Shown here: positions 1,593-54,037 of the stretch, piece by piece
Layout: each line of letters begins with the position of its first letter
How positions within the stretch are numbered: the first letter of the stretch is position 1
Virus record (IMG/VR): IMGVR_UViG_3300031521_001337
Coordinates: 1-64,000 of that record
Length of the DNA stretch: 64,000 bases
Direction: 5' to 3' (one strand)
Position numbers and translations under genes: made by a program
The notes under the pieces: generated by a model
Seen by the model: only the letters and a program-made list of their open reading frames with translations
The model's database searches: none
Told to the model about the DNA's origin: nothing

Positions 1593-1617
1593 ATTCAACA
1601 CATAACGGACTACAAAC

Positions 1618-1651
1618 AAAAAAGGCTGCTACATAATTGTAACAGCCTTTT
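1618..1651 (-). terminator. Intrinsic terminator after 1673..2296
   Basis: aaaaaggctg...cagcctttt hairpin. Confidence 0.7.
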
Positions 1652-1672
1652 AAATTTGGATTGATTTATTGA

Positions 1673-2296: not shown

Positions 2297-2582
2297 TTAA
2301 AAGGTTAATAATTTCTGCCTTCTCTTCTGCACTCATAGTACTTACAGAAGTCTTTAATGCTTCAATTCTTTGTGCTTTAATTTCGGCTTCTTTTTCAGCT
2401 TTCAATGCTGTTAAATTAGCTGTCCATTTCTCACACTTTTCAAGTTGTTCATCACACCTTTTTAGTAGCTCGTCAGATGTTAATAACTTACCAAATGAAG
2501 TACCATAAGAATCTATTGATTCTTTTCTCTGACCTACTTTTTTTACTTGTGCAGCATCTGCACTTTGAATATTTTTATTCAT
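2289..2582 (-). CDS. Hypothetical coiled-coil protein
   Basis: 97-aa ORF with a Bacteroidetes-type promoter upstream (TTTG-17nt-CACCTTTG, 2625-2653). Confidence 0.7.
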   Translation of the reverse strand: MNKNIQSADAAQVKKVGQRKESIDSYGTSFGKLLTSDELLKRCDEQLEKCEKWTANLTALKAEKEAEIKAQRIEALKTSVSTMSAEEKAEIINLLNA

Positions 2583-2694
2583 TTAAATAAAGCAATCTGT
2601 TTTAGTTTGTTTGTGATTGCGATACAAAGGTGCGACAATATGAAAAGCCCAAAAGTAATGGTTAAAATGGTCTAATTTACCTACCCCGCATTAA

Positions 2695-3564: not shown

Positions 3565-3590
3565 AATATTGTTATTTTTTGACAAAAGTA

Positions 3591-3625
3591 AAAAAAAGTC
3601 TGTAATCAACAAAGACTACAGACTT
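3591..3625 (-). terminator. Terminator closing the lysis cassette
   Basis: Minus strand aagtctgtagtc...gattacagacttttttt. Confidence 0.7.
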
Positions 3626-3630
3626 CAATA

Positions 3631-3837
3631 TTATTTACCAATCTTTTTATATTGGTAATCTACCCCAAACAAAGCACCTGCAAAGGTGCATATTTCCCCA
3701 AAGGCTACTAAAATACTGTTATGTATAACTCCAATGGGTACTACTCAAAAACCCATAAATAAAAGGCATATCCCAGCCAACACCAATACACAAGCTACTG
3801 CTAATTGTACGTTCAATTTTGTTTCTTTCAAATTCAT
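3631..3837 (-). CDS. Small two-TM holin-like protein (1 in-frame TGA=Trp); absent from ORF track
   Basis: MNLKETKLNVQLAVACVLVLAGICLLFMGF[W]VVPIGVIHNSILVAFGEICTFAGALFGVDYQYKKIGK; resembles Bacteroidetes phage lysis-cassette membrane proteins. Confidence 0.8.
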
Positions 3838-3858
3838 TACTTACTTTTTTATTTGTTT

Positions 3859-4452
3859 CTATTTTAACACCTTTATAAATCGAAAGTCTTTTACCTCTGA
3901 ATGAGGATTTAGTTCTTTCACTTCTATAACCTGTATTGTTTGTTTTTTCTGGAACAACCTTCACAAAAAGAATTTCTTTGGTGGTTTTATTGTTTCACGC
4001 TTATCATAAGTAATTGCTATTACTTCATTTCTTACTTTCAAATCTACATTAAGCGTATCTGGTGCTTTAAATTTCAAATCTAGGCTGTACCATTCATCAC
4101 CAGTTTTAGCTTCATAATCACGAATAAACACACTGTCTTTTAATGTTACAGTATCTTTTATTTGTGTTTGGGAATTTATAAAAACCGTTTCAGTTACCTT
4201 TTTAGGTTTAAGTTTTAATTCACCTATCAACGTTTTTACTTTTAAATCAGATGAATCTTTACTATCCTTCAAATCAGCTAAAGTAAATTGATAAACTACG
4301 TTCTTTCTAACTGATGCTTTATAGTTATTGGTAGCCGTTTTTAGCTCCTCATTCAGTTGTTTTGTGTGGTTATATGAAAACCACAATAAAACCCCACAAA
4401 TCAAAGCTATTGAAGCCAGCAGTATAATTAAATATTTCTTTATTGCTATCAT
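3859..4452 (-). CDS. DUF6549-like, spanin-like lysis protein (1 TGA=Trp)
   Basis: N-terminal TM plus coiled coil; read-through gives PPKKFFL[W]RLFQKKQTIQVIEVKELNPH, ending TAG at 3859. Confidence 0.75.
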
Positions 4453-4838
4453 TACGTTTTTATTAGTTGTTTCTTATTATCACCTTCTCTATATTCTATG
4501 TGAACTCAGGCAAAATTATGTTCATCTATCAACTGTCTAAACTCAAAATGTTCTTTTATTAGCTTATAAAGTAAAGCATTATCATCACAATCTAAATCAG
4601 CACAAGTACCTAATAAATGACCAGAAGTACTTACACCACCAACCGCTTTATTTACATCTGGACTTCTAAAACCGCTGTTAATTTTAATTGGTTTACCATA
4701 CAATTCCCTCAAAGGATCTAACACATTTGTAACTAATCTTTGCAGATTAGCTACTTGTGTTTCATTAGGAATATTTACTATCTTTTTATCTGTATGAACT
4801 AGTTCTTCATACGTGAATCATTTTGATACTATTTTCAT
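4452..4838 (-). CDS. Endolysin, peptidase M15A (2 TGA=Trp)
   Basis: LDPLRELYGKPIKINSGFRS, SGHLLGTCAD; read-through restores the catalytic [W]VHIEY motif. Confidence 0.9.
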
Positions 4839-4855
4839 ATTACATTTATTTGATA

Positions 4856-5890
4856 TTATTGTAATGGTGGTTGATTTGAAACGATAGCTGAGTAAGTTTG
4901 TGACCATCCATCATTATTAAAATTCACTCTATAATAGATTGTTGAACCTACAGAAAATTTTGATATTGCACTTGATAAATCAAAATATGCTGAGCCACTT
5001 TGTACTGATGTTCCTGGACTTGTAGTATTAGCATTACAAGTAGCTGATGTGTTAGTTAGGAACTCATTAGTAGTAAAATTAGAATCTGATGCAATTTCAA
5101 ATTTGATATTTACATTATTGTTTTGAACCCTCAAATCACCTAAAATATTTAATGATGCAATTATACCCGAATTACCTGTTTTTCTATATGCAAAGAAAGT
5201 CAAATCTGTATATCTCATTGAATTTGTCCAAGGGTCTGATGGTATTACTACAGAAAAAATATAACATTCACCATCTCCATTATTAGAGATTGCATCAATA
5301 CCACTTATCCATCTTCTATCGGGTGAACTCTTATGTACAACTTTAAACCAAGCTGTTGAACCAACAGTTAAAGCACTACCACCATCGGGTGGGCTTTGTG
5401 GGTTAATTTGAAATTGAAAATATGGGTAATATCCTGTTTGGTCACTTATCATTTTTACAAAGTTTGTATGTACAAAATCATTACCATATCTATTAAAATA
5501 TACATCAAAAGTATGAGCAATTGTAACAGGTGTTTTTGTGCTCATATCTTCTTTTGCATATACTATAGGTAATCTCATATATATAGGTGAATAATAATTT
5601 ATTGAATCGCTAGTTTTATACCCATTGTTTCCAGTGAACGTTATCCAGTTGTGGTCATAATTTCTAAAAACCCCAAGCGGATAACCTTGTTTTGGGAAAA
5701 CTGTTTGATTTTCATTTTGTCTTTGATATGGTGTTTTTCCAAAGTATGCAGATTGTTCTTTATAATCGGGACTATTAAAACCATATTCATTAACTAATGA
5801 ACTCAAACACAATGTTGATACATTATGAGTATTTAAACCTAGTTCTTGCCCTACTAATGTAGTAGTAATATTTGTTGATGGTAATGCCAT
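4856..5890 (-). CDS. Tail-associated protein
   Basis: MALPSTNITTTLVGQELG N-terminus typical of genes following Bacteroidetes phage fibres. Confidence 0.6.
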   Translation of the reverse strand: MALPSTNITTTLVGQELGLNTHNVSTLCLSSLVNEYGFNSPDYKEQSAYFGKTPYQRQNENQTVFPKQGYPLGVFRNYDHNWITFTGNNGYKTSDSINYYSPIYMRLPIVYAKEDMSTKTPVTIAHTFDVYFNRYGNDFVHTNFVKMISDQTGYYPYFQFQINPQSPPDGGSALTVGSTAWFKVVHKSSPDRRWISGIDAISNNGDGECYIFSVVIPSDPWTNSMRYTDLTFFAYRKTGNSGIIASLNILGDLRVQNNNVNIKFEIASDSNFTTNEFLTNTSATCNANTTSPGTSVQSGSAYFDLSSAISKFSVGSTIYYRVNFNNDGWSQTYSAIVSNQPPLQ

Positions 5891-5891
5891 A

Positions 5892-8800
5892 TTATTTATT
5901 TTTTAAAGTATTTATTTCTTGTGTTAGTTCTTGAATTGCTCCGATTAAATATGGTATTAACTTGATATAATCAACTGATAAAAATTCATCGTTATAAATG
6001 TTATGTACTAGGTTTGGAAGTACTTCTTTTAATTGCTGAGCAATAACACCAACATCTGTTTTTTCATCCTTATTTGGGTTTAATTCTTTAGCTTTTTCAT
6101 TCCAATTATATTGCACTGGATTTAATTTATTGATTACGTCCAAAGAATTATTTAATGGTTGAATGTTTTCTTTTAACCGTTCATCAGATGCACTATAAGC
6201 TACTATTTCACCCGCTGCTATTACATTTCCATTTGAAATAAAATTACTAGCAGTAACATTACCATTGAAATGAGAATTATCACTTCCATCAATATAAAAT
6301 GGAGTTGTACCATCGGAAGCATTTCTAATTGAAAATCCAGTGTTTGAAATTCCTTGTATTGAATTTTTAATATAGTATTGCTTAACTCCTGCTTGTGAAC
6401 CTTGTAATTGTATTCTTGCCTCACCTCCAACATCATTTCTAATTAGCACAGCACTTTTGTTAATTAGAGCAATATCACCTGTTCCACTTTCAGCACTAAT
6501 ATATACTGCATTGCCAGTAAACTGTAAGTAACCTTGTCTAACTGTATTTGCTGAATTATAACCACTCAAATAAGCGGCATCAGCAATCATTTTTATTCCC
6601 TCACCTGCATAAGTATTAACAGTTCCAGTTGCCATTAAAGTACCATTCACTGCCAACTTATACCCTTGGTCAGAAATATATCCAATCCCAGTATTACCAT
6701 TAGGGCTAATATAAAACCTCCCAATATCGGGTACTGTATTAGCACTTTGGGTTGATTGAGTAGTAATTGCAAAATCTCCATAAGACTGATAATCTGTATG
6801 TATGAACCATTTCCTAGAACTACCATTAGATACATTATGGTCAAATGATAACATTCCTACCCAACCTGAACCGCTAGGCAATGATAATCTTCCGTTAATT
6901 CCCATCCCACCATTAAGAACTAATGCTCCTGTTGATGGTGATAGTGATTGAGTTGTGTTTGGTATACTTACTACTCCATTACTTTCAATAGTCAATAAGG
7001 GAGTAGTTGCATAATTAAAAGTAAAGGCTTTGTTTCCCCACTGTCCAACAGAATTAAAAATCATTGACCCATAATTATCTCCACTACTAATAAAATAGTC
7101 AAAAGAAGAACCTGAACCAAATTTTAATTTACCTGAATAATTATTAGATGGTATATTAATAGCAAAATAATCACCTCTAGCTGATGCATTTGTCCCATCA
7201 TCACTTATCAAACTATTTACAAAATTACTCCCATTCCATTTAGGAATGTAGTTTGTTGATAAACTTGATAAATCTTGTGTAGCAATATTATTTACGCCAA
7301 TAAAATTTCTAATTTGAGTACTAGTAGCAGGACTCATTCTAGCATTAGGGGCATCGTATACCATTACATAACTTACCGTAGACGCAAAATCAGCGCCATA
7401 GTATTTTAAACCATTTACCATTTCAGCATTCAAATTCCCCACCATAGTAGTAGAATTTACAGTTAATGGTGCTGTTCCAGTTGCTACTGTTGATTGTAGT
7501 TGAGTTGCATTTACTGTAGAAGTAAAAGTTACTGCTCCTGTTTTACTTAACCTAAATCTTTCTGTATAAGTATGTGCAATAGCTTCTGTATTGTATGCTC
7601 TAGCATCAGAATAATCAATTACTAAATCAGTACCACTTCCACTGTATTTGTTGGCAATTCTATAAACTCTTTGGTCAGTTCCACCATCGGCATATAAGTA
7701 CATAGCACTACCATAATCAGAATCCAATGCTCTTAATTCAACACTATGATATGTTACACCAAATTTGCCTTTTCCATACGCTGTAACATCCCCACTAATC
7801 CACATATTTGCAGATTGTGCAGAGCTATTTTGGTTTAATATGTGGTCGTTATTGTTGGTATAAGCCGATGAACCTAGACCTAACCAAGATTGTATTTGAT
7901 TTTGTGTAAAATTATAAACATATCCGTTAGAGTAACCTCCTAGTAAATTAGTAGGTACGGATTGATTAGCAGTTCCATTATATACTGTTCCTAGTGTTAT
8001 ACTAGAGCCTAAAGTCCCACTAGAAGATACAAAGTCTCCAGTGTTACTACTGGCTGCTGAACCGAATGTTCTAGTAGGTAGTGGAGTATAACCTAAAGCA
8101 GTAGTAACCATTCCTGAGTTGATACCAGTTATCCATCCACCGTAGTTACCAAGATTATTATTAAATTGACTGAGATTAGTTGGAAAATCACTAACCTGCG
8201 ACTTAGTAATGCTTATGCCAGTAGATTTATTCCATGCAATAAATATAGGGTCAGTTTCAGTAAAACTAGATAAATAGTTATGTGTATGAGTAGTTATTAG
8301 TCCAGTAAGAACTCCTTCAACTTGGGATTTAGTTATACTAGAAATATAACCACTAGGATTTGTAGAATTATAGGGAGTGTATCCTAATGCTGTAGTAACT
8401 TGAGTTCCAGTTATACCAGTAAGATATCCATATCCAGTCCAAGGAGTACCAGTAACAAATGAACCATAATTACCTAAATCATTAGTAAATTGAGATAATA
8501 ATGTAGGTTTAGAAGTTATTTCTGAATAAGCGTAGCTTGGTTTTGTAGAAGCTTTAGCTCATGAATAAACATCACTAGCTGGTAAAGTTGTAGGATAATC
8601 TGGTAAACCATATCCACTAGTTGTGGTAGGATGGCTACCTGAGTATCAATATCCAACTGATGTTCATGGAGTTCCAGAAACATATGATGTATTATCATAA
8701 GTAATAGAAGTTCCAGACATTCTAACTAGACCAGTACCATTTAATTGAGCTTGAGCTCCAATATCTAATAAAGTTAATCCATGTGGATTACCGCTATTTA

Positions 8801-10631
8801 TTTGTGAATGATCATAAGCAATTTTTCCACGATCTCCTCTATATGCTGTTGCTGAAGTTTCTCCTAAAGCTAAAGATGAGCTGATAATAGCATAAGTAGT
8901 TCCACCTCATCTATAAGTTAAATTAGTGGTTGTGTCTATGTATATCTTACCAGATTCTCCAACTGTAGGAAATAAACTTATAGAAGTATATTCTAATACA
9001 TCATCTACATAAGATGGTAATTGTGAATTTTTTACAAAGCCATTTGAATCAAGTTCTGCCAATCCATTATTAGCTCCTTTTAATGATACATCTAATTTTA
9101 AATCTAATGCACTTTGTGTAGCAGTAGATATTGGTTTCAATAAATCTGATGTATTATCTACATTATCTAAACCTACAGCAGCCTTATTTAAAGGTTGGAA
9201 TGTTTTATCACCTCTTCAGTAATCAGTAATTAATCCTGATGTTATATTAGGTTCTTTAGTATTTAAAGCTAATTGAGTTAAGATTGATATAGGTTTGTCT
9301 ATATCTCTAGTATTATCTACTTGACTTAATCCAATTTGTGCTTTAGTTGTAAAGTGAGGATTATTTGTATTAGTAATGTGAGCTTGTATATTAGCATTAG
9401 CTGGTTCTTTAGTAGCTAATTTAATATTGTTATTAGCAATAGTTTCATAAGGTGTTAAATCTTGATCATCACTATGAGCTACGTGTATTTTAGCAATATC
9501 TACATTTAATACTAAAGAATATCCAGGAATTTTTACAACTAATCCAGATAGATCTTGATCATCACTATGTGGTGCATGTAAATTTGTCTTTTCTGAATCA
9601 GTTACATAATTATCATCAGTTCCTTTTTTAGGTTCTGCATAATTTTGAACATAAGTTTCAGTTGCTAATCCTGTTATACTTGGAATATTAGGTTTATTTA
9701 ATATTAAAGTATCTCCACTAGTTGCATTTCAATCAGCATTTACATTTGCTTCTGCTCCAGTTTGAATTCCATCTAATTTATTTTTATATGTATTAGTAAA
9801 ATCATTAGTAGATAATCCTTTTCCAGTTTCTTTTGGTTGTAATACTGATAAATCTTGATCTCCAGTATTCTTACCACTTACTAAATCTAATGCTGCTTTA
9901 TTACTATGTAAATGTGTTTCTAAGAACGCGGAATCATAAGCAGCTTTTAATTCATCTGTTAAATCATTAGTACTTAATCCTTTTCCGAGAATTTTATCAA
10001 CTTTAGTTCCTAATGCTGCATATAATCCTTCTACTTCTCCAGTAGATAATGGAGCATTTAAATATAAATGAATCAAAGCATTAGTAATCGTTTTAACTAA
10101 TATTGCAAAATCATCTTGCATATAATAATTTGGGTCACTATTAAATCTCATCATTACTTCTGATAAGTATTGTAATAATTCAAACAAACTATTAATTTGA
10201 GGAAGTAATGTTGGATCGGATGGAAATAAACTTCCAGATCCTGGTGTGATACTTGGGATTGCATTTACAGATTCATATGATCCTAATACATCATTATTAC
10301 TTGGTGAATTAGTATTCAATGATAAATCTGTAGGAACTGCATTATCGTATACCGGAATATCAGTATTTAATAACATCCCATTATTTTGTATAGTAGGTGT
10401 TACTACTATTTCATTTGAAAGATTATTGAATTCTGTTGTATTCAAATCTAATAATGATGGATTATTCTGAGATTCATGTTGAATGAATTCAGAATTTAAT
10501 AAAGTAACAGTTAAAGTAGTTGATATAATATCGCTATCTTTAACTGTTACTTCATCTGGTACATCAGTTACTATTAAATTATCTACTGTAGGAATTACAA
10601 TATCTGTTAATAGTATATTGCTTTGTATCAT
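5892..10631 (-). CDS. Long tail fibre (about 1579 aa) with C-terminal peptidase S74 chaperone domain; 6 TGA=Trp
   Basis: Track ORFs 9729..10631, 8907..9140 and 5892..8111 are one frame joined only by TGA: NVNAD[W]NATSG, DY[W]RGDKT, TYR[W]GG, PASDVYS[W]AK. Ends with SDERLKENI...GVIAQ. Confidence 0.9.
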
Positions 10632-15898: not shown

Positions 15899-16171
15899 TT
15901 ATTCTTCTCTTGTTTCAGAGTTTCTATATACTTTATATACTTCTTGTCTAACATAATTTCTAACTCTTAATTCTGTGTATACATAATTTAAGAATTCTTC
16001 GTCAGTTTCACAGTCTATAGCAAATGAGGTTTGCACCATGTAACTTGGAATACCTAAAACACACTTATAACCAGGATTGAGTTTATCAACTCTTATTAAT
16101 CCTGTATAGTCAGCTTTATATCAGCTCTTTATATAATCACGAATCGCTTGCGCTAATTCTAGCTCGTCCAT
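15899..16171 (-). CDS. Conserved crAss-like protein between terminase and portal, 90 aa, 1 TGA
   Basis: MDELELAQAIRDYIKS[W]YKADYTGLIRV...EEFLNYVYTELRVR. Confidence 0.8.
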
Positions 16172-18224
16172 CTCTATTGTCTTTTGCTGGTATTATACCA
16201 TGATGTTTATAACCTTTATTATCTGTTCACCAACCTATGTTTTGGAATCCTTTACCTTCTACTTCTTTTGCTTCAGGACGTTTAACTGACATTTCTTCAT
16301 CACCAAGTTCACACATTCCCATTGCAGCTACGATATCAAAGTCTTTCTTTCCTTCATCCGTATAATCTAATAATTGATCAACCATATCTTTAAACGCCAT
16401 TGTACGGGAGTAATCCAAAATGTAATCATATATTAATTCACGATAATGTAGAATAACTTTAACTGTTGCAGGAGTTCCATACATTTGACTATTACCTTTA
16501 GATACATCAGGCATTGTAGACCTTGGTCTTTTCATTAATAGATGTAAATATTTTTTATCTCTAAAATAAGTAATAATAGCTGTTCTTGTTGATTCTAATA
16601 CAGCTTGACATCCATAATAAGTTAATAGTTTTGCTGCTGCATCGTAAGCTTCTCTAGGATCTTTAGGTCTGTCTTTATACATTGCTACATAAACAGGATC
16701 AGATTGTCCGAACACTCTTTTCTTTATAACAATACAAAATTCAGATCCTTTACCATCAGCACTTGCTGAATCAGCAGTACCAATATCAATAGAGTCAATT
16801 CCACCTACGTATAAGTTTTTATAATCTGTCCCTAATTCGGACATTAAAGGATGTTCTATAATTTGGATTTTTCCATCTTGTGCATCCTCTCTTCATTTAA
16901 CCCCATCTGCTCTATCATCTCCATCTCGTTTTCATACAAGATGTCCTGAATGTATTGTAGGAGTTGATTTGTAAATTTCTATTTGTGCAAGTTGTTCTGC
17001 AAGTTCTTCTCTAGGAAATAAATTATCAGCATGTTGTATAAGAGCTTCTTCAATAGTAAAACAATACTCTGACTTAAATTCTAGTAAATCCTTTGGACTA
17101 TTAACTAATTTAATTCTTTCTTGTTCATACCAATCTTTAGCTTTTTCTAAATTACATCATCCTCGTTTATCAACTAAATCATAAACAACTCTATAAGCTG
17201 GAATAAATAATCCACTTAATATGTATCTACCATCTCTAGTATAATTATGTTTAACAGGTAAAATATTATATGCAGTTGGATCATTTGTCATTCTTTTAAG
17301 TCCTTCCATAGAACTAGCTTTAGATGATCCACCTGTACCAAATGCAATCTTTCTACCAACGCGTTTACCTCCAAGTACTGTTATTAATGCAGTACCTTTA
17401 ACTCATTTTTTCATCAAAACAGGATCTGCTCCTGCTTCTTCGTAAATTAGAATTTGTGTTCTATCACCCCTTAACTTATCGGGTTCATCACATACTAATC
17501 CTTCTACTTCTGACTTATGACTGTCTGGCGCTTCACCACCATCTTTATCTTTCTTAGATGCTCTTTTATGAGTCTTAGAATTTGCTACCATTCTAACCCT
17601 TTTGAAAGCTCCTTCTGTATTTTCATTTAATCAATCCATTTGAATCCATATCTTATCAAGTGTTGGTTTCAAATGCTTTTCTGAAAACGTAGAAACTACT
17701 GAACGAAAGTTAGGAATTGTTGTATATGGTCTAGTTATAAAACTAGAAGCCATTTCCGAGAATCCGATACCACGACTTTTAAGTACTGAAGTATCTTTCT
17801 TTAATTTTTCACACATTTCCAAGTAATGGAAATATTCGTATTGAAAAACAAGAAACTCAGGAAATCCATAAGATTGATTAATTGTTTCTGAATCAGAAGA
17901 TTTAAGGTTATAAAAATTAATGAAGAAATAATTATCTCCAGTTATACGATAACCATTGACTTCATATCCTTCATTACATCTACGTATTCTTTCTTTCCAT
18001 CAATCTCTATGAGTTTTAGAACCCATAGGTATAGATGATGGACTATATCTACCTGTTTTTAATTTGTTAATTGCATCTTCTCTAAATCAATCAGGATTAA
18101 AGTCTAATGCATCAACATCATTAATAGGGCGATATTTAGTCATAAAGAAAGATTTATAACTATCGAAATATTCAATTTTATCATCTGGACCAAAATCTCA
18201 TGTTATTCCATCAAGTATTTTCAT
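16116..18224 (-). CDS. terL: Terminase large subunit, 702 aa, about 10 TGA=Trp
   Basis: One frame: YRITGDNYFFINFY, LKSRGIGFSE (Walker A region), RGDRTQILIYEEAG (Walker B), YVGGIDSID nuclease motif, FDIVAAMGM. Confidence 0.95.
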
Positions 18225-22080: not shown

Positions 22081-23529
22081 TTAATTTATATTTAATATTG
22101 TGCATCCATTAGTTAAGATCAGTGATGCTACTGATACTGCATTTTCTAAAGCTATCTTTGTTACTAGGAAAGGATCTACGATTCCCATTTCATACATGTC
22201 TCCAATTTGTCTAGTCTTATAGTCTTTACCTTCCCAGAAATTGAAAATATCTATACCATCTGCTTTATTCTCAGATAGTATTAAATTAGGCATTACCAAT
22301 ACTTTACTTAAATATTTTAAGTCTAAAAGTTTAGCAGCTCTAAGTAATGAGAAACCTCCACCAGGTAATATACCATCTGTCATAGCAGCTCTAACCGCAC
22401 AAATAGCATCTTCTAATCTATCTTTCTTTTCTTGTATTTCAACTTGAGAATATCCACCAACAAATATAGTAGCTATACCACCAATATAATTAGCTAATCT
22501 CTTTCTTTGAAACGTCATTTCAAACTCAGTTGTACTACAACTAAGTGTATTTTTTACTTCTAATATTTTAGCATCAATAACCGATTGGTTAGATTCACAT
22601 CCTATTAGATATGTAGTATCTTTTGATACTATAATTTTTTCACAAACTGAAGTAGAAGCAATACATTCGATATCATCAAGTAAAGTTTCTCTATAGATAC
22701 CATGTCCGGGTGAACTAATAAAACAAGACTTTAGATTTCCTGTATTATTATTATGTACTAGAGTTCTTAGTATTGTGGATTCCATTTTTGGAGCAATAAT
22801 AAGAAGTGCTTTCTTTTCTCTCATAGCTCTACTACATACTTCGTCAATATCTTTAATCTCAGTTAAAGGTATTCTAAAAACTGCAATTAATACATTTTCT
22901 AGTTCACATGTACTCTTAGTTGTATTAACAAAGTATGGTGAGTTATATCCTGATTCAATTTTAACTCCTTGTGAAAACACAACTGAATTATGTGTATCTT
23001 GTGAATCTTCTATAGTTACTACTCCATCTTTTGTAACTTTAAAATAAGTTTCAGCTACAAGTTTACCAAGTTCAATATCATTATTTGTAGATACTGTGGC
23101 AACTTTAATTAAGTCTTCTACACTTGTGATTGTTCTTTTATTCTTTTCCAAATATTCTATAACTTGTTTGAGTTCTTTATCTAACTCTCTACTTATAGCA
23201 ATTGGATTTTCAGTCTTATCTTTTAAAGTATTAACTAAAGTTTGAGCAAGAATAGTTGCAGTGGTTGTACCATCTCCAACATCAGTTGCTGTTTTAGTTG
23301 CAATACCTTTTATAAGTTCAATACCTGTACTAATAAATGGATCATCATCGTTTACATATTTTGCAACGGTTGCTCCATCCTTTGTTATATACACTCCTGA
23401 GAGTCCTTTGATTATAACATTTTTTCCATTAGGTCCGAATGTTGTTGACACAGCATCGCCTATTAAATTCACTCCTTCAATTAAGATGTCTTTTGCATCT
23501 CCATTAAATAAAACATTTTTCATTATCAT
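22081..23529 (-). CDS. groEL: GroEL-like chaperonin (short, 482 aa)
   Basis: TFGPNGKNV, ITKDGATVA, GDGTTTAT, EKKDRLEDA, GILPGGG, GIVDP. Confidence 0.93.
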   Translation of the reverse strand: MIMKNVLFNGDAKDILIEGVNLIGDAVSTTFGPNGKNVIIKGLSGVYITKDGATVAKYVNDDDPFISTGIELIKGIATKTATDVGDGTTTATILAQTLVNTLKDKTENPIAISRELDKELKQVIEYLEKNKRTITSVEDLIKVATVSTNNDIELGKLVAETYFKVTKDGVVTIEDSQDTHNSVVFSQGVKIESGYNSPYFVNTTKSTCELENVLIAVFRIPLTEIKDIDEVCSRAMREKKALLIIAPKMESTILRTLVHNNNTGNLKSCFISSPGHGIYRETLLDDIECIASTSVCEKIIVSKDTTYLIGCESNQSVIDAKILEVKNTLSCSTTEFEMTFQRKRLANYIGGIATIFVGGYSQVEIQEKKDRLEDAICAVRAAMTDGILPGGGFSLLRAAKLLDLKYLSKVLVMPNLILSENKADGIDIFNFWEGKDYKTRQIGDMYEMGIVDPFLVTKIALENAVSVASLILTNGCTILNIN

Positions 23530-23818: not shown

Positions 23819-24249
23819 AATATAAATCCTATTGCACTACTAATACCCATAAATAATGGAGTTCTTGCAGCTTGTTTTTTATATTTAGTTTTTAAGACTT
23901 CTTGAGATTTTCCCCATTTGTCTGCTTTATTAAACTCTGTAACAGTATAACCTATAATAGAATCTTTTTCTATTACTATATTTTTAAAGTTATCTAATTT
24001 TTTATTTTTTTCAATAATTATAGAATCCTTTATTTTAGATTGTTGTATTTCGATGTTATATAACTCTCGAGTTTCTTCCAATCCAGTAACATATAATCTA
24101 ACGTTAGTCAAATCAGTTTTTGTGTAATTGTAAGTAATAATAGTATCAGGATTACTTTTTCATACTGTTCACTTTGGTGACGATTGAGTCCATCCAACGA
24201 GCGTGCTCATAAGCAGAAGCACTGTTAATACTTTTAATTTTCTTATCAT
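23797..24249 (-). CDS. Secreted/membrane protein, spanin-like, 2 TGA
   Basis: Read-through adds signal peptide MIRKLKVLTVLLLMSTLVGW; C-terminal TM; overlaps upstream gene. Confidence 0.6.
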
Positions 24250-24523
24250 AGTACATTAATATTATTGGTTTTATATCTCCAAGAGAATCATTCTTTTTCT
24301 CTAGTACTCATATAGTGCTATCTGCTTTTCTGTTCAATAATTCATATGCTTTTATTTTCTTATTACAACTGTCAACCTTTAATTGTTCAATCTTATAATT
24401 ATTATCTAAGACTTTGTATTTGTCGTTCTGTATTGAGAATGCTATACACACCAATAGGAATACAAAAATTCCGACGGCTATTTTAAAATACAATTTTTTC
24501 TCTGGATTTTTTAAATTCTTCAT
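24152..24523 (-). CDS. TM plus coiled-coil protein, i-spanin-like, 1 TGA
   Basis: N-terminal TM; KADSTI[W]VLEKKND continues to TAA at 24152. Confidence 0.6.
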
Positions 24524-26817: not shown

Positions 26818-29082
26818 TTATAATCTAGTGATCTCACATGAACCTCCGCTACAAGCTTGGGCCGCTGTGTCACTAATGTCTTTATATGTTGGCTTGTTTA
26901 GAATCTCTCCAAAGTCAACTGGTTTAAATTGTCTATTAATTACTTCCCATTTATGAAATAGATGTACATCTTTTAAACAATATACAGTCTTTTGTAAATC
27001 TCCTCCAAAGAAGTTGTTAGCAAATTTCTTTGCTCTAGCCAACCAATATTTCTTAAGCATTACTTGTTCTCTTGTTCCAGTAATAGGAACTGATTTATCT
27101 TTAATCATATCACAAGCAATCCAAAGATTGTCGTTAAAATAATGTAGTCCATCAACAATTAATCCAGATGCGAATAATGCACCTTTTCCATAGTCACTCA
27201 TTAGTTGATCTAATGAAGATACAGATGTGAATGGAGCTTGTGTAAAATCTTTATCTCCGTAATCAGATATAAAGGATACTGCTGTAAAGTCATGTTTGTT
27301 ATTCCAAATATAATCTATAACAGCTTTTTGATCATCAACAATAACAGTATTAGATGTATTATGATTCACATCAGGATATGCACATAGATCGCGATTAGTT
27401 CCCTCATTTACCCAATTTAATTGTACTAGTTTTATTAGTTCAAGATGTTTAACACCTTTTACGTCTTTCTTATATAATCCCTCAATAGGATTCTCAATAG
27501 GAACAAATACAACATAATCAGATCCAGTACTTGACCAAACACTTTCTTCTAAAAGATAAGACATATGTTTGTTCAACCATTTGGCTGTATCGTTTTCTTT
27601 GTTTAGTTGCATGATTCTAAAATACTTTTGAGAATGTTCAGGATGAATACCTGACGCAGTTCCCAATACTACAGATGCATTACCCGATGGTTTAACACAT
27701 GTCGTTCTAGCAGCTTGATTAATTCCAATCTTTTCAGCTATTGTCTTGTTTGTTTCTTTAACTAAAGATGCACCATGTTTTAAAATGTCGGTGTTAAACA
27801 ACATTGGGTTATTCATCCATCCTGTAACAGATACTCCTAATAGAGCTTCTTGTCTTACAATCTTTTCAGTGGTTTCTCCAAGATAAGGAAATGATGTATA
27901 ACCTGCTTGTAGTGTTCCAATGATTGCACCAGCAATACACGCAGAATAAAAATTCTCAACTATATCACATTGTTCTGCATTAATCTCACAAAGATTACAG
28001 AATGCTACACCTAGTTTGTCTTCATTATCTCTAATAAATTCTTCTATCTTATCATAAGATACATCATTTATTTTTGTACTAATTTTTGAATGAAGAATTG
28101 GGTGTTTAAGAATTTCGAAACAAGGATTGAACATATCAAACCATGAGTTAGCAAATGCAAAACCAATGTCAGAATATCCATCATTCATTTTAACAAGCTT
28201 TTCAAATTCTTCTTTTCCGGTTAAACTTCTAAGAAGTAACACCGAATTATTTGTTCTTCCACGTTGTGGGTTATTAGTTCTCCAGTTACCAACTTTAGCA
28301 TTAATCATTTCATCATCATTTGGATCAACAATCATGTTAAGAGCAGAACGTCTAACTCCACCTGATAATACTGCGTCTGAGATGTGACATAGAATATCAC
28401 ATACAGCGATTGGTCTTAGTTTAGTGCCTTCTGATGTAATCCATTTATTTAAGAACTCTTCGATCTTTTCAAATGATTGTTTTAAACCATCAGGTCCTGG
28501 AGCTTTGAATCCTCCACTAATGAATGCACCTTTTTCTCTTACTTCTGAATAGTCAAATTTAATTTCGTATCCTGCATACTCTGGAAAAGGTTGTTTATCA
28601 ATGAAGAATGATGACATCAATACACCAAATGCATCAGACCATCCTTCAATTGAATCGGGAACAATAAATGTTTTAGTCCCTTTAGTTCTTTTATTTACTT
28701 GTGAAATGTTATTCACAAAAGGAATAAGTAATCCTAATCCTACACCACAACCACTTAATGCTAAGTAAAATACTTCTTGGAATATTTTATTTCTAGCAGC
28801 ATACATAGATGAACAATTATAAAGTCTTGCATTGTTACGTTCGATCTGCTCATTTCTATACTGTAGATTTCGTTGTGAAGCTAGTACCGTTTTAGATTGC
28901 ATATATTTCAATGCGTATTCTAATTCTTTACTTAGGTCTACATCTGCATAATGATCTTTATGACCATTGATTATAGACTCACATGCTTCATTCCATGTTT
29001 CGTATCGACCTTCTTCTGGTCTCCACTTTAAGTAGTCAGAGTGAAGTTTTAAGTCACTCAAAAATTTCTTTCCTGCGTTCAT
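26818..29082 (-). CDS. nrdJ: Class II (adenosylcobalamin-dependent) ribonucleotide reductase
   Basis: YNCS, GCGVG, GGVRRSA, NPCFEI, FCNLCE, TCVKPSGN, C-terminal ACSGGSC. Confidence 0.88.
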   Translation of the reverse strand: MNAGKKFLSDLKLHSDYLKWRPEEGRYETWNEACESIINGHKDHYADVDLSKELEYALKYMQSKTVLASQRNLQYRNEQIERNNARLYNCSSMYAARNKIFQEVFYLALSGCGVGLGLLIPFVNNISQVNKRTKGTKTFIVPDSIEGWSDAFGVLMSSFFIDKQPFPEYAGYEIKFDYSEVREKGAFISGGFKAPGPDGLKQSFEKIEEFLNKWITSEGTKLRPIAVCDILCHISDAVLSGGVRRSALNMIVDPNDDEMINAKVGNWRTNNPQRGRTNNSVLLLRSLTGKEEFEKLVKMNDGYSDIGFAFANSWFDMFNPCFEILKHPILHSKISTKINDVSYDKIEEFIRDNEDKLGVAFCNLCEINAEQCDIVENFYSACIAGAIIGTLQAGYTSFPYLGETTEKIVRQEALLGVSVTGWMNNPMLFNTDILKHGASLVKETNKTIAEKIGINQAARTTCVKPSGNASVVLGTASGIHPEHSQKYFRIMQLNKENDTAKWLNKHMSYLLEESVWSSTGSDYVVFVPIENPIEGLYKKDVKGVKHLELIKLVQLNWVNEGTNRDLCAYPDVNHNTSNTVIVDDQKAVIDYIWNNKHDFTAVSFISDYGDKDFTQAPFTSVSSLDQLMSDYGKGALFASGLIVDGLHYFNDNLWIACDMIKDKSVPITGTREQVMLKKYWLARAKKFANNFFGGDLQKTVYCLKDVHLFHKWEVINRQFKPVDFGEILNKPTYKDISDTAAQACSGGSCEITRL

Positions 29083-29143: not shown

Positions 29144-29174
29144 AAAAAAGCCCACTACTTTTGATAATGGGCTT
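29144..29174 (-). terminator. Terminator upstream of nrdJ
   Basis: Minus strand aagccc...gggctttttt. Confidence 0.65.
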
Positions 29175-29250: not shown

Positions 29251-29430
29251 TTACCATTTAGGTTCTAGTTTATTATAATTTTTTACTATATCTCCAACTA
29301 AATCCGGAGTGTATTGTAAAAGTGTTTCTCTTATAAATTTTTTAGAAGGATTACCTAATTTTATTTGAATATTTCTATAACTTAATCCTTCTTTTCTTAA
29401 TTCTATTATTTTTTGTTCTAGTTCGGTCAT
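29251..29430 (-). CDS. Small HTH protein
   Basis: IIELRKEGLSYRNIQIKLG. Confidence 0.7.
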   Translation of the reverse strand: MTELEQKIIELRKEGLSYRNIQIKLGNPSKKFIRETLLQYTPDLVGDIVKNYNKLEPKW

Positions 29431-29996
29431 TATACACATTCCTCCACCTTTAAAGTTTGTCTGTATTTTGCTCTAGCACTATTTTTATTTTTAGATTTAA
29501 ATGTATCAAGTTGACTATCGCAATTAGGACATATACACCTTAAATTGCTACGTTCATTATTATCAGCATTACCATCAATGTGATCTAAAACAAATACCAA
29601 TTCTTTATCATTCCAAGTATTCGGATTTCCACAAATTGTACATTTATAATCTTGTTCTTTTAAAAAATGTTTTTTATAATTTGACATATTAGATTGTCCA
29701 TAAAGTATGGAATTATCTAATTTATATTTTTCATAATTTAAAATTATTTTATGTTCATTTGAACATTGTTGACTACAATATTTATTTGTAGTTCCAGATG
29801 GTTTAAATTCATTATTACAATTTAAACATATCTTATTTTCCAATATTTTTTTTCGGCTAGGAATATTTATCCCTAGTTTAATTGCCCAGGTTCTAATAGT
29901 AACATCAGATACACCAAATGTTCTTGCTATTTCAGCATATGATAACTTATCTATTAATATTAGTTTTTCTAATTCTTCTTTACTTGTTCTATTCAT
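29430..29996 (-). CDS. HNH homing endonuclease with HTH and Zn ribbon
   Basis: LDHIDGNADNNERSNLRCICPNCD; ATG at 29996 (track start lies inside the tRNA). Confidence 0.88.
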   Translation of the reverse strand: MNRTSKEELEKLILIDKLSYAEIARTFGVSDVTIRTWAIKLGINIPSRKKILENKICLNCNNEFKPSGTTNKYCSQQCSNEHKIILNYEKYKLDNSILYGQSNMSNYKKHFLKEQDYKCTICGNPNTWNDKELVFVLDHIDGNADNNERSNLRCICPNCDSQLDTFKSKNKNSARAKYRQTLKVEECV

Positions 29997-30014
29997 ATTT
30001 ATTCTATCATTTTG

Positions 30015-30087
30015 CACCCTTGGTAAGACTCGAACTCACACTTACAAATTTTGAAGATTTGTGTGCTAACCATTACACTACAAAGGT
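30015..30087 (-). tRNA. Opal suppressor tRNA, anticodon UCA (predicted Trp-charged)
   Basis: ACCTTTG TA GTGT AATGGTTA GCAC A CAAAT CT-TCA-AA ATTTG TAAGT GTGAG TTCGAGT CTTAC CAAGGGT G; full cloverleaf with A1-U72 and G73, short variable loop. Confidence 0.93.
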
Positions 30088-30116
30088 ATGATGAGGTTTT
30101 AAAGAACCTCTAACTT

Positions 30117-30545
30117 TTATATTAGTTTTGTAATATCTATTACTTTACTTAGTGTTGAATCAACAACAAAGATATTGTTACCTGTAATAGAATAACTTCC
30201 ATTTTCTTCTTGACCCCATAACCTTAACCAATCTTTTAACCATACTCTATGAGGAGTAAACATTATATAAGTATTTCCAGTTGCATTTTCTGATTCTGCA
30301 TTTACATCGGTAATCATATCAGTAACCATAGTAACGATTGGTCAGCGATTTTTCCTATCAACTTCCATTAATATTAATTCTAAATCTACTGTTGCAATTG
30401 GTGAACTATAATATTCGCCTGCACTTTTATTAGGATCGTTAAAAACTTCGACGAGTTCATCATCAAATCTAACAGTCCATTCACCTTTAACCCAAGTATT
30501 TTCTTCTGTGGGTTTGTAATTAAATTTCTTTAGTATTTCTTCCAT
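30117..30545 (-). CDS. Hypothetical protein, 1 TGA joining two track ORFs
   Basis: DRKNR[W]PIVTMVTDM in frame. Confidence 0.6.
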
Positions 30546-30569
30546 ATATCATTCTCATTTTCTATACTA

Positions 30570-30577
30570 CAAAGATA
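30570..30577 (-). promoter_or_regulatory. Bacteroidetes sigma70 -7 element upstream of the suppressor tRNA unit
   Basis: TATCTTTG matches TAnnTTTG in an AT-rich intergenic gap. Confidence 0.55.
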
Positions 30578-30650
30578 CTGCTAAAAATTCAATAAAAATC
30601 TATAATATAAATATTATTGAAAATTAGCAGTATATGTAATTTTATGTTTA

Positions 30651-32730: not shown

Positions 32731-33102
32731 TTAGTCTTCTTTGTATTTAGTATTGTTATCATTTAACATTTTAATCATTCATATCATACTATCATCATCT
32801 GTGTAATCTGAGAAATCGTTATAACCTCTTCGGGTATATCATTCATACATTCAACTATCCCGTTTAACTCATAAAAAGGATTGTGTAGCTCCGAGTTCTA
32901 TTCCTATTTTCTCTCTTAGTTCCTGCATTTTAGTTCCAAGTCCTTGTTCTCTTTCGTTATTCTCAACACTTAAAGAGTTTAAGTAAACTGATTTTGGATC
33001 ATCATGGAATCAATACATCCTAGCATAAGCTTTCCCTTCAATTTCCATAATGTATAATTCATCATGGTCGTCATTACGAACGAAGTGTTGTATTACTTCC
33101 AT
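32731..33102 (-). CDS. GNAT-family acetyltransferase, 123 aa, 5 TGA=Trp; absent from ORF track
   Basis: VYLNSLSVENNEREQGLGTKM (motif A), FL[W]V, [W]YTRRGY (motif B). Confidence 0.8.
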
Positions 33103-36927: not shown

Positions 36928-37201
36928 CAATACTCTCTCATAAACATAATTGAAAAAATCATTAGATCTGATGGTTTTTAGTACGGTACAGATATCCCGG
37001 GTTCAATTATGTTTACTTTCATAAAAGACTTATGATTTGATTAACCGTCGTCCGACGGTGTTGCATACGGTGCATAATAGTCCGGAGCCTATCATGAGTC
37101 TTTTTTACAATATACATTCCTCATCAGTCTGTATTTCTTTCTAATTATCATTATTTCTATCCCAACTATATTTAGTATTACAGTGATGTAAGAACAATAT
37201 G

Positions 37202-37279
37202 ACTCAGCCTAGGAGAGTATAACATCAGTTTCTGAAGAGACTAGGACGAAACGGGGAGCTCATCACTCCCGTCAAACTC
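37202..37279 (+). ncRNA. Hammerhead ribozyme, pseudoknot type
   Basis: CUGAAGA-G...C-GAAA core; pseudoknot CCUAG/CUAGG; stem III CGGGG/UCCCG; GUC^ at 37273; stem I GUUU/AAAC. Confidence 0.88.
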
Positions 37280-39689: not shown

Positions 39690-39692
39690 TTA

Positions 39693-39761
39693 ACTCAACC
39701 AGTAGAGTATAAAATAGTTTCTGATGAGACTGGACGAAATATGTTTAAACATATCAAACTC
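39693..39761 (+). ncRNA. Hammerhead ribozyme, pseudoknot type
   Basis: CUGAUGA-G...C-GAAA; pseudoknot CCAGU/ACUGG; stem III hairpin UAUGUUU-AAACAUA; AUC^ at 39755. Confidence 0.9.
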
Positions 39762-53951: not shown

Positions 53952-54037
53952 TTGGATATAGCTCAGCCTGGTTAGAGCGTCGGCAGCAAGACAAAAACAT
54001 TAGCCGGAGGTCGGAGGTTCAAATCCTTTTATCCATA
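53952..54037 (+). ncRNA. tRNA-like RNA with an 18-nt anticodon loop
   Basis: Canonical D arm, T arm and acceptor; stem TCGGC/GCCGG encloses AGCAAGACAAAAACATTA. Confidence 0.75.

What the first reader, a model, noticed from the sequence alone, without database searches (positions are those of the whole stretch)
29996..30577. Opal suppressor tRNA(UCA) in its own small unit with a host-type promoter
A perfect 73-nt cloverleaf has anticodon UCA plus G73 and A1-U72, which are bacterial Trp identity elements. It lacks the long arm of tRNA-Sec and has no encoded CCA. It lies downstream of a TATCTTTG -7 element and of a gene with one mid-gene TGA (67 aa without suppression, 142 aa with). An HNH gene follows immediately. 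Inference: this is the switch for the late code, and the upstream gene could act as a sensor or feedback element.
Basis: partly seen in the sequence, partly recalled or inferred. Interest (0 to 1): 0.72.

Follow-up and report, generated by a model that had tools for sequence, protein, structure and literature searches.

The report
Phage opal-suppressor tRNA with conserved partner gene
A real tRNA that reads the stop codon UGA as tryptophan sits in a 205-kb crAss-type phage from peat whose late genes are full of in-frame UGA; that kind of tRNA is already known, but it always travels with a small uncharacterised protein that a structure model places on release factor 2.

Summary
The tRNA is real: 30015..30087 (-), anticodon UCA, G73, A1-U72, no encoded CCA, and no tRNA-Sec features. 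Eight orthologues keep the cloverleaf, with compensatory changes in 16 of 21 pairs.

The window belongs to a 205,306-bp phage from peat metagenomes with 29.6% GC and a crAss-type capsid. Its portal, terminase and tail-fibre genes on the minus strand carry in-frame TGA. These TGA codons align with Trp in relatives. The plus-strand block uses the standard code. This is the known code-4 phage recoding described by Yutin 2021 and Borges 2021.

The "gene with a mid-gene TGA" is two genes. N is 67 aa and is the only family member seen that stops with TGA. C is 70 aa. In one relative the tRNA lies between their homologues.

The promoter call holds. A TAnnTTTG box lies about 21-25 nt before the start of N in 12 of the 15 modules examined, two more lie inside over-long start calls, and the sixteenth module has one just before its tRNA. 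The unit runs promoter, N, C, tRNA, HNH, 62-aa HTH gene, terminator.

The new part is N. It represents 115 sequence clusters, and a tRNA(UCA) follows it in 16 of 17 contexts examined. A complex model places N on RF2's ArfA-binding surface (score 0.70, controls 0.00). That is a prediction only.

The parts
30570..30577 (-). -7 promoter box TATCTTTG (Bacteroidota sigma-A type, TAnnTTTG), 25 nt before the ATG of gene N
   Evidence: A TAnnTTTG box lies about 21-25 nt before N's ATG in ours, L014, L015, G001, G002, L167-L171 and L173, and directly before the called ATG in L172. In L174 and L175 it lies inside over-long start calls. In the genome, 6 of 25 TATCTTTG copies lie in the 3.6% of sequence just upstream of ORF starts.
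30592..30600 (-). Conserved T-rich upstream box (GATTTTTAT), 14-15 nt upstream of the -7 box; a possible -33 region
   Evidence: Aligned upstream regions of five relatives. Function is inferred.
30342..30545 (-). Gene N: 67-aa acidic protein of an uncharacterised family; its stop codon TGA is at 30342..30344
   Evidence: There are 115 cluster representatives, nearly all 58-85 aa. AlphaFold pLDDT is 90 for the 67 aa alone. No Pfam, PDB or fold match. A tRNA(UCA) lies downstream in 16 of 17 contexts.
30117..30329 (-). Gene C: 70-aa ORF with its own ATG, in frame with N, 12 nt after N's TGA; not a conserved module member
   Evidence: Its homologue in L015 (6645..6842) lies after the tRNA (BLASTP 7e-10). 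It is absent from the other contexts.
30167..30174 (-). Second TATCTTTG inside gene C, about 80 nt before the tRNA; a possible internal promoter
   Evidence: No comparative support.
30093..30110 (.). 7-bp hairpin between the stop of gene C and the tRNA 5' end
   Evidence: It is terminator-like only on the + strand; its role is unknown.
30015..30087 (-). tRNA(UCA), class I, 73 nt; anticodon at 30052..30054; G73 at 30015; C74 at 30014, no CCA
29430..29996 (-). HNH homing endonuclease with an N-terminal HTH, inserted between the tRNA and the 62-aa gene
   Evidence: Present in ours, G002 (61% identical), L168 and L174; absent in G003 and L175.
29251..29439 (-). 62-aa HTH protein, a usual downstream neighbour of the class I tRNA
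29148..29174 (-). Intrinsic terminator-like hairpin (11 bp followed by a T run) that closes the unit before the RNR gene
   Evidence: 2 such sites found in the region, 0.5 expected.
26818..29082 (-). Class II ribonucleotide reductase, TGA-free here; the next gene downstream (context)
   Evidence: Its homologue in L014 has TGA at three invariant Trp positions.

Best explanation
The tRNA is a functional phage opal suppressor that lets a crAss-type phage of a standard-code, probably Bacteroidota, host read UGA as tryptophan in its late genes.

Shown:
- The cloverleaf is conserved with compensatory changes.
- TGA is in frame in the portal, terminase, tail-fibre and many other minus-strand genes, and it alternates with TGG/Trp among relatives.
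- The plus-strand block and the tRNA unit itself are written in the standard code.
- The tRNA is the second member of a conserved pair, N then tRNA(UCA), behind a conserved TAnnTTTG box.

Inferred:
- Host RNA polymerase transcribes N, C, tRNA, HNH and the HTH gene as one RNA, from the box at 30570..30577 to the terminator at 29148..29174.
- Host RNase P and 3' processing enzymes release the tRNA, and the host CCA-adding enzyme completes it. The phage encodes none.
- Host TrpRS charges it through G73, A1-U72 and C35-A36. The phage has no TrpRS.
- With U34 it reads UGA and probably UGG, competing with host RF2.
- As it accumulates, TGA-containing structural genes become translatable.
- The TGA that ends N is an ordinary, leaky stop. 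Late in infection some N-C fusion may form, but that is incidental.
For: - tRNA. Across 3 orthologues 100% of cells pair, 8 pairs have double changes, and 0 of 500 shuffles reach this. Across 8 orthologues 16 of 21 pairs covary.
- Code: coding density rises from 0.6-0.8 to 0.93-1.0 when TGA is read as sense, only in 8-32 kb and 128-213 kb. TGA+TGG makes up 0.9-1.5% of codons in recoded blocks against 1.34% TGG in the standard block.
- TGA = Trp: our TGA positions align with W or TGA in relatives. L014's RNR has TGA at three Trp positions that are invariant in four relatives.
- Late genes: tail fibre, portal, TerL-like genes and the neighbours of the crAss-type capsid gene carry TGA.
- No RF, TrpRS or CCA-adding enzyme is encoded.
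- Unit: promoter footprint and terminator. The N-to-tRNA gap is 4-15 nt in 11 relatives, which leaves no room for a separate promoter.
- Host clue: the closest cultured-phage hits are Cellulophaga, Flavobacterium and Bacteroides phages, and the capsid matches Crass_capsid.
- Literature: crAss-like and other phages use UGA suppressors for late genes (PMC7886860; 10.1101/2021.08.26.457843). Middle and late genes of the crAss-like phage phi14:2 are transcribed by host RNAP (10.1101/2020.03.07.982082).
Against: - There are no expression, processing or aminoacylation data. The only 'RNA' runs holding any words are wastewater libraries with short pieces of relatives.
- A1-U72 is not universal in the orthologues: G1-C72 in three, C1-G72 in one.
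- No Bacteroidota tRNA-Trp(CCA) with the same D arm was found in a pattern scan of 185,579 genomes, so descent from a host tRNA-Trp is not shown.
- About half of the related modules carry a long-arm class II tRNA(UCA) instead, although TGA still stands at Trp positions. This shows that the rules for charging in this lineage are not understood.
- Timing (early, middle or late) is inferred from position and promoter type only.
- The host is not identified.
Confidence: 0.82

Rival explanations
1. One reading: N plus C is one 142-aa gene whose mid-gene TGA makes it a sensor or feedback element of the code switch.
For: The two ORFs are in frame with 12 nt between them. N's stop is TGA followed by C. 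In three relatives N itself carries TGA at a conserved Trp, so some N genes do depend on suppression.
Against: N homologues are stand-alone proteins of 58-85 aa in nearly all of 115 clusters. The 13 other N genes whose stop was read all end with TAA at the equivalent position. N alone folds with pLDDT 90. In L015 the tRNA gene lies between the N and C homologues. C is absent from the other 14 contexts. About 10 standard-code genes of this phage also stop with TGA.
Confidence: 0.07
2. The tRNA inserts something other than Trp at UGA (Gly as in code 25, Cys, Ser or Sec).
For: ARAGORN labels it SeC. Related modules carry Ser/Sec-like long-arm tRNA(UCA); L015's matches Rfam tRNA-Sec at 47.2 bits against a cut-off of 47. 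An all-frames tally showed many Cys alignments.
Against: The window's tRNA has no long arm, a 7/5 acceptor/T branch and a 4-bp D stem. In true reading frames TGA aligns with W, not C, G or S. The Cys signal came only from antisense spurious ORFs. TGA+TGG frequency equals the Trp frequency of the standard block.
Confidence: 0.05
3. The tRNA is a passenger of the HNH homing endonuclease, or a decaying relic without a role. Recoding would then be served by a host suppressor or by another mechanism.
For: The HNH gene abuts the tRNA in four genomes. Only 35-40% of recoded phages have detectable suppressors.
Against: The tRNA is present with or without HNH. Its structure is under purifying selection. 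It is the only UCA tRNA among this genome's 26 tRNAs and one tmRNA, and it sits at a conserved position next to N in 16 of 17 contexts.
Confidence: 0.04

Closest known systems
Suppressor tRNAs of stop-codon-recoded crAss-like phages (Yutin et al. 2021, PMC7886860), especially the large Zeta group (145-192 kb)
   Same: A crAss-type capsid, a large AT-rich genome with many tRNAs and mobile endonucleases. TGA is read as Trp mostly in late genes. The suppressor is phage-encoded, and blocks of two codes share one genome.
   Different: The source is peat, not gut, and the unit is 205 kb. Order membership was not tested by phylogeny. The conserved N-tRNA pairing and the two alternative tRNA architectures were not mentioned in the passages of that paper I read.
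'Code change module' of TGA-recoded Jade phages (Borges et al., 10.1101/2021.08.26.457843): suppressor tRNA + TrpRS + RF1 upstream of lysis genes
   Same: A standard-code cassette that holds the UGA suppressor, placed ahead of recoded genes. The model is the same: the suppressor switches on late genes.
   Different: No TrpRS and no RF1 are encoded here. The partner is instead a 67-aa protein of unknown family. The hosts differ too: Firmicutes there, probably Bacteroidota here.
tRNA-Trp(UCA) of code-4 organisms (Mycoplasma, mitochondria) and E. coli tRNA-Trp-derived opal suppressors
   Same: Class I tRNA with a UCA anticodon, G73 and A1-U72. A U34 wobble would be expected to read UGA and UGG (established knowledge, recalled from memory).
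   Different: It works in a host that keeps RF2. Sequence descent from any tRNA-Trp is not shown.
allo-tRNAs and selC*-like tRNA(UCA) (Mukai et al. 2017, PMC5389517)
   Same: The class II tRNA(UCA) genes at the same slot in relatives have long variable arms and an extended D stem. Such odd tRNAs are known from phages and from peat and forest soils.
   Different: The window's own tRNA is an ordinary class I tRNA. The relatives' class II forms fit a 7/5 branch rather than 8/4 or 9/3, and they sit in genomes where TGA stands at Trp positions.
ArfA and BrfA, small RF2-recruiting rescue factors (Demo et al. 2017, PMC5378476)
   Same: N is predicted to touch the same RF2 surface: Val198, Phe217 and the switch loop with Trp319.
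   Different: There is no sequence or fold similarity, N is acidic, and N has no basic tail for the mRNA channel. The expected effect is the opposite one, blocking rather than recruiting RF2. This is a prediction only.

Membership tests
Canonical elongator tRNA (Rfam RF00005) | Cloverleaf with a 7-bp acceptor stem and 5-bp T stem, scoring above the gathering cut-off | tested here: met
   62.9 bits against a cut-off of 29, full length, no non-canonical pairs.
Canonical elongator tRNA (Rfam RF00005) | Structure kept by compensatory changes in orthologues | tested here: met
   16 of 21 pairs have double changes across 8 orthologues; 0 of 500 shuffles reach the observed score with 3 orthologues.
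tRNA-Sec (Rfam RF01852) | 13-bp acceptor/T branch (8/5), 6-bp D stem with a 4-nt loop, long variable arm | tested here: not met
   7/5 branch, 4-bp D stem with an 8-nt loop, 5-nt variable loop. The clan competition kept RF00005.
Bacterial tRNA-Trp identity set (E. coli and B. subtilis rules, recalled from the literature) | Discriminator G73 | tested here: met
   G73 is present in the window's tRNA and in all 15 tRNA(UCA) genes aligned (8 class I, 7 class II).
Bacterial tRNA-Trp identity set (E. coli and B. subtilis rules, recalled from the literature) | A1-U72 first pair | tested here: met
   A1-U72 here. In the orthologues it is A-U in 4, G-C in 2, C-G in 1 and G.U in 1 of 8 class I tRNAs.
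Bacterial tRNA-Trp identity set (E. coli and B. subtilis rules, recalled from the literature) | Anticodon C34-C35-A36 | tested here: not met
   U34-C35-A36, as in code-4 tRNA-Trp; two of the three positions are kept.
Bacterial tRNA-Trp identity set (E. coli and B. subtilis rules, recalled from the literature) | Charged with Trp by TrpRS | not testable with these tools
   Only indirect: TGA aligns with Trp.
Phage stop-codon recoding, code 4 (Yutin 2021; Borges 2021) | In-frame TGA in hallmark late genes, with the standard code elsewhere | tested here: met
   Portal, TerL-like and tail-fibre genes carry 2-10 TGA each. The plus-strand block has none apart from stops.
Phage stop-codon recoding, code 4 (Yutin 2021; Borges 2021) | TGA corresponds to Trp in homologues | tested here: met
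Phage stop-codon recoding, code 4 (Yutin 2021; Borges 2021) | The host uses the standard code | not testable with these tools
   The host is unknown. Indirectly, about 10 early genes stop with TGA, and related cultured phages infect standard-code Bacteroidota.
Jade-type code change module (tRNA + TrpRS + RF1) | Phage-encoded TrpRS and RF1 next to the suppressor | tested here: not met
   No PF00579 or PF00472 match in the whole genome, while the control genomes ring.
Bacteroidota primary-sigma promoter | -7 box TAnnTTTG at a fixed distance upstream of the unit | tested here: met
   Present about 21-25 nt before N's ATG in 12 of the 15 modules examined and directly before the called ATG in L172. 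In L174 and L175 it lies inside over-long start calls.
Bacteroidota primary-sigma promoter | -33 TTTG element and a mapped transcription start | tested here: inconclusive
   A conserved GATTTTT box is seen, but no clear TTTG. No transcript data.
Crassvirales | crAss-type major capsid protein and signature portal and TerL | tested here: inconclusive
   The capsid protein matches PF23898 Crass_capsid at 8e-13, 48 bits against a cut-off of 27. Portal and TerL hit PHROGs. No phylogeny was made.
HNH homing endonuclease | HNH nuclease motif, with presence or absence at one site among relatives | tested here: met
   PHROG 7.6e-22. Inserted between the tRNA and the HTH gene in 4 of 6 class I contexts.
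ArfA/BrfA-like RF2 binders | Binds RF2 domain 2 and the switch loop | tested here: inconclusive
   Predicted only: ipSAE 0.70 against a best control of 0.00. This mark was reached by 58 of 80 solved complexes and 2 of 110 mismatched pairs. E. coli RF2 was used, not the host's.
ArfA/BrfA-like RF2 binders | Sequence or fold homology to ArfA or BrfA | tested here: not met
   No PDB, Pfam or fold match.

The most novel reading that the evidence does not exclude
N is a phage factor that binds host release factor 2 on its switch-loop and domain-2 surface and holds it off UGA, so that the co-transcribed tRNA(UCA) wins the codon. N plus tRNA(UCA) would then be a minimal two-part code-change cassette, spread through a large group of environmental crAss-type phages. 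N genes that themselves contain TGA would form a self-reinforcing loop. This would answer how phages reassign UGA in hosts that keep RF2.
Probability: 0.3. Interest if true: 0.88.

Novelty: new variant of a known kind. Interest (0 to 1): 0.6.

Why it matters
Phage suppressor tRNAs and late-gene recoding are established, so the tRNA alone adds one more example, from peat rather than gut. How such phages beat the host's release factor is an acknowledged open question; Borges et al. list the cellular mechanism of code change as unresolved.

Here the suppressor is tied to an uncharacterised 67-aa protein in 16 of 17 contexts, across 115 sequence clusters. The pairing holds whether the tRNA is an ordinary class I tRNA or a long-arm class II tRNA. 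The one partner tested in silico, RF2, gave a confident, RF2-specific interface.

This yields a small, directly testable hypothesis that needs two genes, a UGA reporter and purified RF2. It may also give a tool for UGA reassignment. The class I / class II alternation at one slot also raises the question of how a long-arm tRNA could be charged with Trp.

Tried and rejected
- **tRNA-Sec reading.** Rejected on structure.
- **TGA = Cys.** Suggested by an all-frames tally. Rejected because the Cys columns came only from antisense spurious ORFs.
- **General TAnnTTTG count as evidence for the promoter.** It is at chance level. Only the specific TATCTTTG enrichment and the comparative footprint carry weight. 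The sigma-70 consensus scan was at chance too: 15 found, 16.5 expected.
- **RNR as a handle for relatives.** It returned 139 loci, but only L014, L015 and L080 shared the flanking genes. The RNR is shared with an unrelated large-phage group.
- **Descent from a tRNA-Trp.** The first genome-wide pattern had a spacing slip and found nothing. The corrected pattern found 12 tRNA(CCA) genes in CPR, Firmicutes and Mollicutes MAGs, and none in Bacteroidota. Similarity to the phage's own tRNA-Trp(CCA) is only 55-60%. Neither result is informative.
- **Function of N.** Nothing came from Pfam, PHROGs, PDB sequence search or fold searches against PDB and AFDB.
- **+4 context of sense TGA.** No bias against strong RF2 contexts.
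- **Expression.** DNA runs are peat metagenomes. The 'RNA' runs are wastewater libraries that hold only short pieces of relatives.
- **Complex model with a Bacteroidota RF2.** Two Swiss-Prot references were not held, so E. coli RF2 was used.
Full report
**The observation**

ARAGORN finds a single tRNA in the window, at 30014..30087 on the minus strand, with anticodon tca. Its 'SeC' label follows from the anticodon alone. Rfam's general tRNA model matches 30015..30087 end to end at 62.9 bits (cut-off 29) with no non-canonical pair.

Read from the sequence, the tRNA is 73 nt. It has a 7-bp acceptor stem (A1-U72, one U.G), a 4-bp D stem, a 5-bp anticodon stem, the loop CU-UCA-AA, a 5-nt variable loop, a 5-bp T stem and G73. 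The next bases are CAAAA, so CCA is not encoded. It has none of the tRNA-Sec features.

The open frame 30117..30545 with a TGA at 30342..30344 is also there, but its reading as one gene does not hold (see below).

**What genome this is**

The window is the first 64 kb of a 213,486-bp IMG/VR virus record with 29.6% GC.
- Bases 1619..8180 recur exactly at 206925..213486, so the unit is 205,306 bp, circular or terminally redundant.
- The first 1,618 bases are an unrelated GC-rich hisB fragment, most likely a chimeric end.
- The same sequence stands in about 19 peat metagenome runs.
- The 476-aa protein at 178083..179513 matches Pfam Crass_capsid (8e-13).
- Portal, TerL-like and tail-fibre genes are recognisable.
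- The nearest cultured-phage hits for two conserved proteins are Cellulophaga, Flavobacterium and Bacteroides phages.

This is therefore a large crAss-type phage, probably of a Bacteroidota host. It also carries 24 other tRNAs, a tmRNA, two RAGATH-1 hammerheads and a pistol ribozyme.

**The code**

Reading TGA as sense raises ORF coverage from 0.6-0.8 to 0.93-1.0, but only in 8-32 kb and 128-213 kb. Together these form one minus-strand block across the record's ends. The plus-strand block at 34.7-130 kb is unaffected.

- In the recoded blocks TGA plus TGG make up 0.9-1.5% of codons, the same as TGG alone (1.34%) in the standard block.
- In true reading frames our TGA positions align with Trp or with TGA in relatives, and our TGG positions align with Trp or TGA.
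- In relative L014 the RNR carries TGA at three Trp positions that are invariant in four other genomes.
- An apparent Cys signal in an all-frames tally came only from antisense ORFs.
- Genes with in-frame TGA include the tail fibre (6), portal (2), a TerL-like gene (10), a PhoH-like gene (1) and the giant proteins of 2,815-2,984 aa.
- The capsid, RNR, GroEL and exonuclease genes are TGA-free.
- About 10 plus-block genes stop with TGA, usually backed by TAA or TAG within 12 codons.
- The genome encodes no release factor, no TrpRS or TyrRS-class enzyme and no CCA-adding enzyme.

**Where the tRNA sits**

It lies 4 kb from the divergent junction at about 34.2-34.7 kb. It is inside a 7.4-kb stretch (34187 down to 26818) with no sense TGA in any credible gene; the one exception in the raw ORF list, a 123-aa ORF at 32731..33102 with 5 TGA, may be spurious. 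That stretch also holds a replication-initiator-like HTH protein and the RNR. TGA-containing genes begin just downstream, from 26801.

**The 'gene with a mid-gene TGA' is two genes**

- In relative L015 a 74-aa homologue of the first part (2e-10), the tRNA(UCA), and a 65-aa homologue of the second part (7e-10) follow each other as three separate genes.
- Homologues of the first part, here called N, end at residues 67-78 in G001, G002 and L015. L014's has an unrelated C-terminal extension (116 aa). All four end with TAA.
- A profile search of 1.84 billion representatives finds 115 clusters, nearly all 58-85 aa long.
- The 67 aa alone fold with pLDDT 90 as helix, five strands, helix.
- The second part, C, has its own ATG at 30329 and occurs only here and in L015.

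The TGA is therefore N's stop codon, the only TGA among the 14 N genes whose stop was read. The in-frame position of C looks accidental. Some N-C fusion late in infection is possible but not conserved.

**A conserved module**

In all six genomes of the immediate clade a tRNA(UCA) follows N. I then sampled 11 further N clusters spread over the whole E-value range, each under 50% identical to the others. Ten of them have a tRNA(UCA) just downstream.
- The gap between N and the tRNA is 4-15 nt in 11 of the 16 modules.
- The one exception is the weakest hit, on a 1.7-kb contig.
- The flanks vary: PhoH, RNR with or without inteins, HNH, unknown genes, or a divergent junction upstream.

Upstream of N, a TAnnTTTG box (mostly TATCTTTG, followed by T) lies about 21-25 nt before the ATG in 12 of the 15 modules examined and directly before the called ATG in one more. 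In the remaining two it lies inside over-long start calls. A T-rich box lies 14-15 nt further upstream. The sixteenth module, G003, instead has TAACTTTG 16 nt before its tRNA.

The motif by itself is at chance frequency in this genome, so this comparative footprint is what supports the promoter. In the window a strong terminator-like hairpin at 29148..29174 follows the 62-aa HTH gene. The likely unit is promoter, N, C, tRNA, HNH, HTH62, terminator.

The HNH gene is an insertion. It lies between the tRNA and HTH62 in four genomes and is missing in two.

**Two tRNA architectures at one slot**

The module's tRNA is either class I or class II.
- Class I: 73-75 nt, 8 sequences, 16 of 21 pairs covary.
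- Class II: 92-98 nt, 7 sequences, 18 of 29 pairs covary. It has a long variable arm and an extended D stem and fits a 7/5 branch. One of them reaches Rfam's tRNA-Sec cut-off.

All have G73, and most have A1-U72. G001 is a complete relative whose capsid protein is 93% identical to ours. Its only UCA tRNA is class II. L014, also a class II carrier, has TGA at invariant Trp positions. How a long-arm tRNA would receive Trp is unexplained.

**N and release factor 2**

The pairing suggested a role in decoding UGA, so I modelled N (with its 5-row alignment) against E. coli RF2. Bacteroidota RF2 references were not held.
- The median score was 0.70 against 0.00 for all three controls.
- That mark was reached by 58 of 80 solved complexes and 2 of 110 mismatched pairs.
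- The tool's verdict is that the model supports binding but does not show it.

The RF2 residues in contact are 135-138, 198, 200, 217, 219, 318-322, 325 and 336. They match the surface used by the rescue factor ArfA: Val198, Phe217 and the switch loop 315-323 with Trp319. That surface distinguishes RF2 from RF1 (PMC5378476).

The N residues in contact include the nearly invariant R26, E33 and Y45. N proteins are acidic, with a median pI of 4.5, and have no Pfam, PDB or fold relative.

This is a prediction with a foreign RF2 and without an RF1 control. I put the anti-RF2 reading at about 0.3.

**Mechanism proposed**

Shown: a structurally constrained tRNA(UCA), TGA standing for Trp in late genes, a standard-code cassette, and a conserved promoter box with the N-tRNA linkage.

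Inferred:
- Host RNA polymerase transcribes the cassette. [quoted passage not shown]
- Host enzymes cut out the tRNA and add CCA.
- Host TrpRS charges it.
- It competes with RF2 at UGA, possibly helped by N.
- Its accumulation permits translation of structural genes.

**Comparison and novelty**

UGA and UAG suppressors serving late genes are described for crAss-like phages (PMC7886860) and many other gut phages. The latter include a tRNA + TrpRS + RF1 'code change module' (10.1101/2021.08.26.457843). The tRNA is thus a new member of a known kind.

Three things were not mentioned in the passages of these papers that I read:
- the fixed pairing with a small protein family;
- the alternation of class I and class II tRNA(UCA) at one slot;
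- the predicted RF2 contact.

I searched the held library for phage inhibitors of RF2 and found none. That is not proof that none has been described.

**Limits**

There are no expression, processing or charging data. The host is unknown. The survey of N contexts covers 17 of more than 115 clusters.

Noticed in passing
window 1..1618: A GC-rich cellular fragment encoding a bifunctional HisB (IGPD 5.5e-60 plus a HAD domain, ORF 288..1082 +). It is not part of the terminal repeat and is probably a chimeric end of the assembled record.
   Followed up: partly
window 1619..8180 = G000 206925..213486: An exact 6,562-bp repeat at the two ends of the record. The true unit is 205,306 bp, although the record is classed as linear without end repeats.
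   Followed up: yes
window 37201..37278 and 39692..39760 (+); 58909..58970 (+): Two RAGATH-1 hammerhead ribozymes (59.4 and 67.6 bits) and a pistol ribozyme (41.6 bits), all in the standard-code block.
   Followed up: no
window 53952..54037 (+): A second tRNA by Rfam (47.5 bits) that ARAGORN misses without its intron option. It has an 18-nt anticodon loop or an 11-nt intron. ARAGORN calls it Leu(caa), but it lacks a long arm.
   Followed up: partly
G000 68160..68566 and 76584..88810 (outside the window): A phage tmRNA and an array of 24 tRNAs. The tRNA-Trp(cca) is 82 nt with an enlarged variable region. Relatives G001 and G002 have Trp(cca) genes of 84 and 76 nt.
   Followed up: partly
L014 3564..3656; L015 6540..6634; L154 1243..1338; L167, L169, L171, L173: At the slot of the window's tRNA, about half of the related phages carry a long-arm class II tRNA(UCA) with G73 and an extended D stem. 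TGA still stands at Trp positions in these genomes.
   Followed up: partly
L156 about 8760..8919 (-); L171 245..436; L175 3001..3231: Three N genes contain an in-frame TGA at one of their own conserved Trp positions, so their translation depends on the tRNA encoded next to them.
   Followed up: partly
G000 178083..179513 (-); window 22081..23529 and 26818..29082 (-): The crAss-type capsid gene (0 TGA, 7 TGG), GroEL and RNR avoid TGA although they lie in the recoded strand block. In relative L014 the RNR does carry TGA.
   Followed up: no
G000 plus-strand block 34.7-130 kb: About 10 standard-code genes end with TGA. In 9 of them a TAA or TAG follows in frame within 12 codons, which looks like a back-up stop for when the suppressor is active.
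   Followed up: partly
G001 (record behind L099) 24197..24271: A close relative (capsid protein 93% identical) carries a tRNA(CUA) amber suppressor in its tRNA array in addition to the UCA tRNA.
   Followed up: no
window 16116..18224 (-) and G000 196388..198001 (-): Two different ORFs hit terminase-large-subunit PHROGs (phrog_6681 and phrog_9). One of them may be a split or second nuclease or ATPase gene.
   Followed up: no
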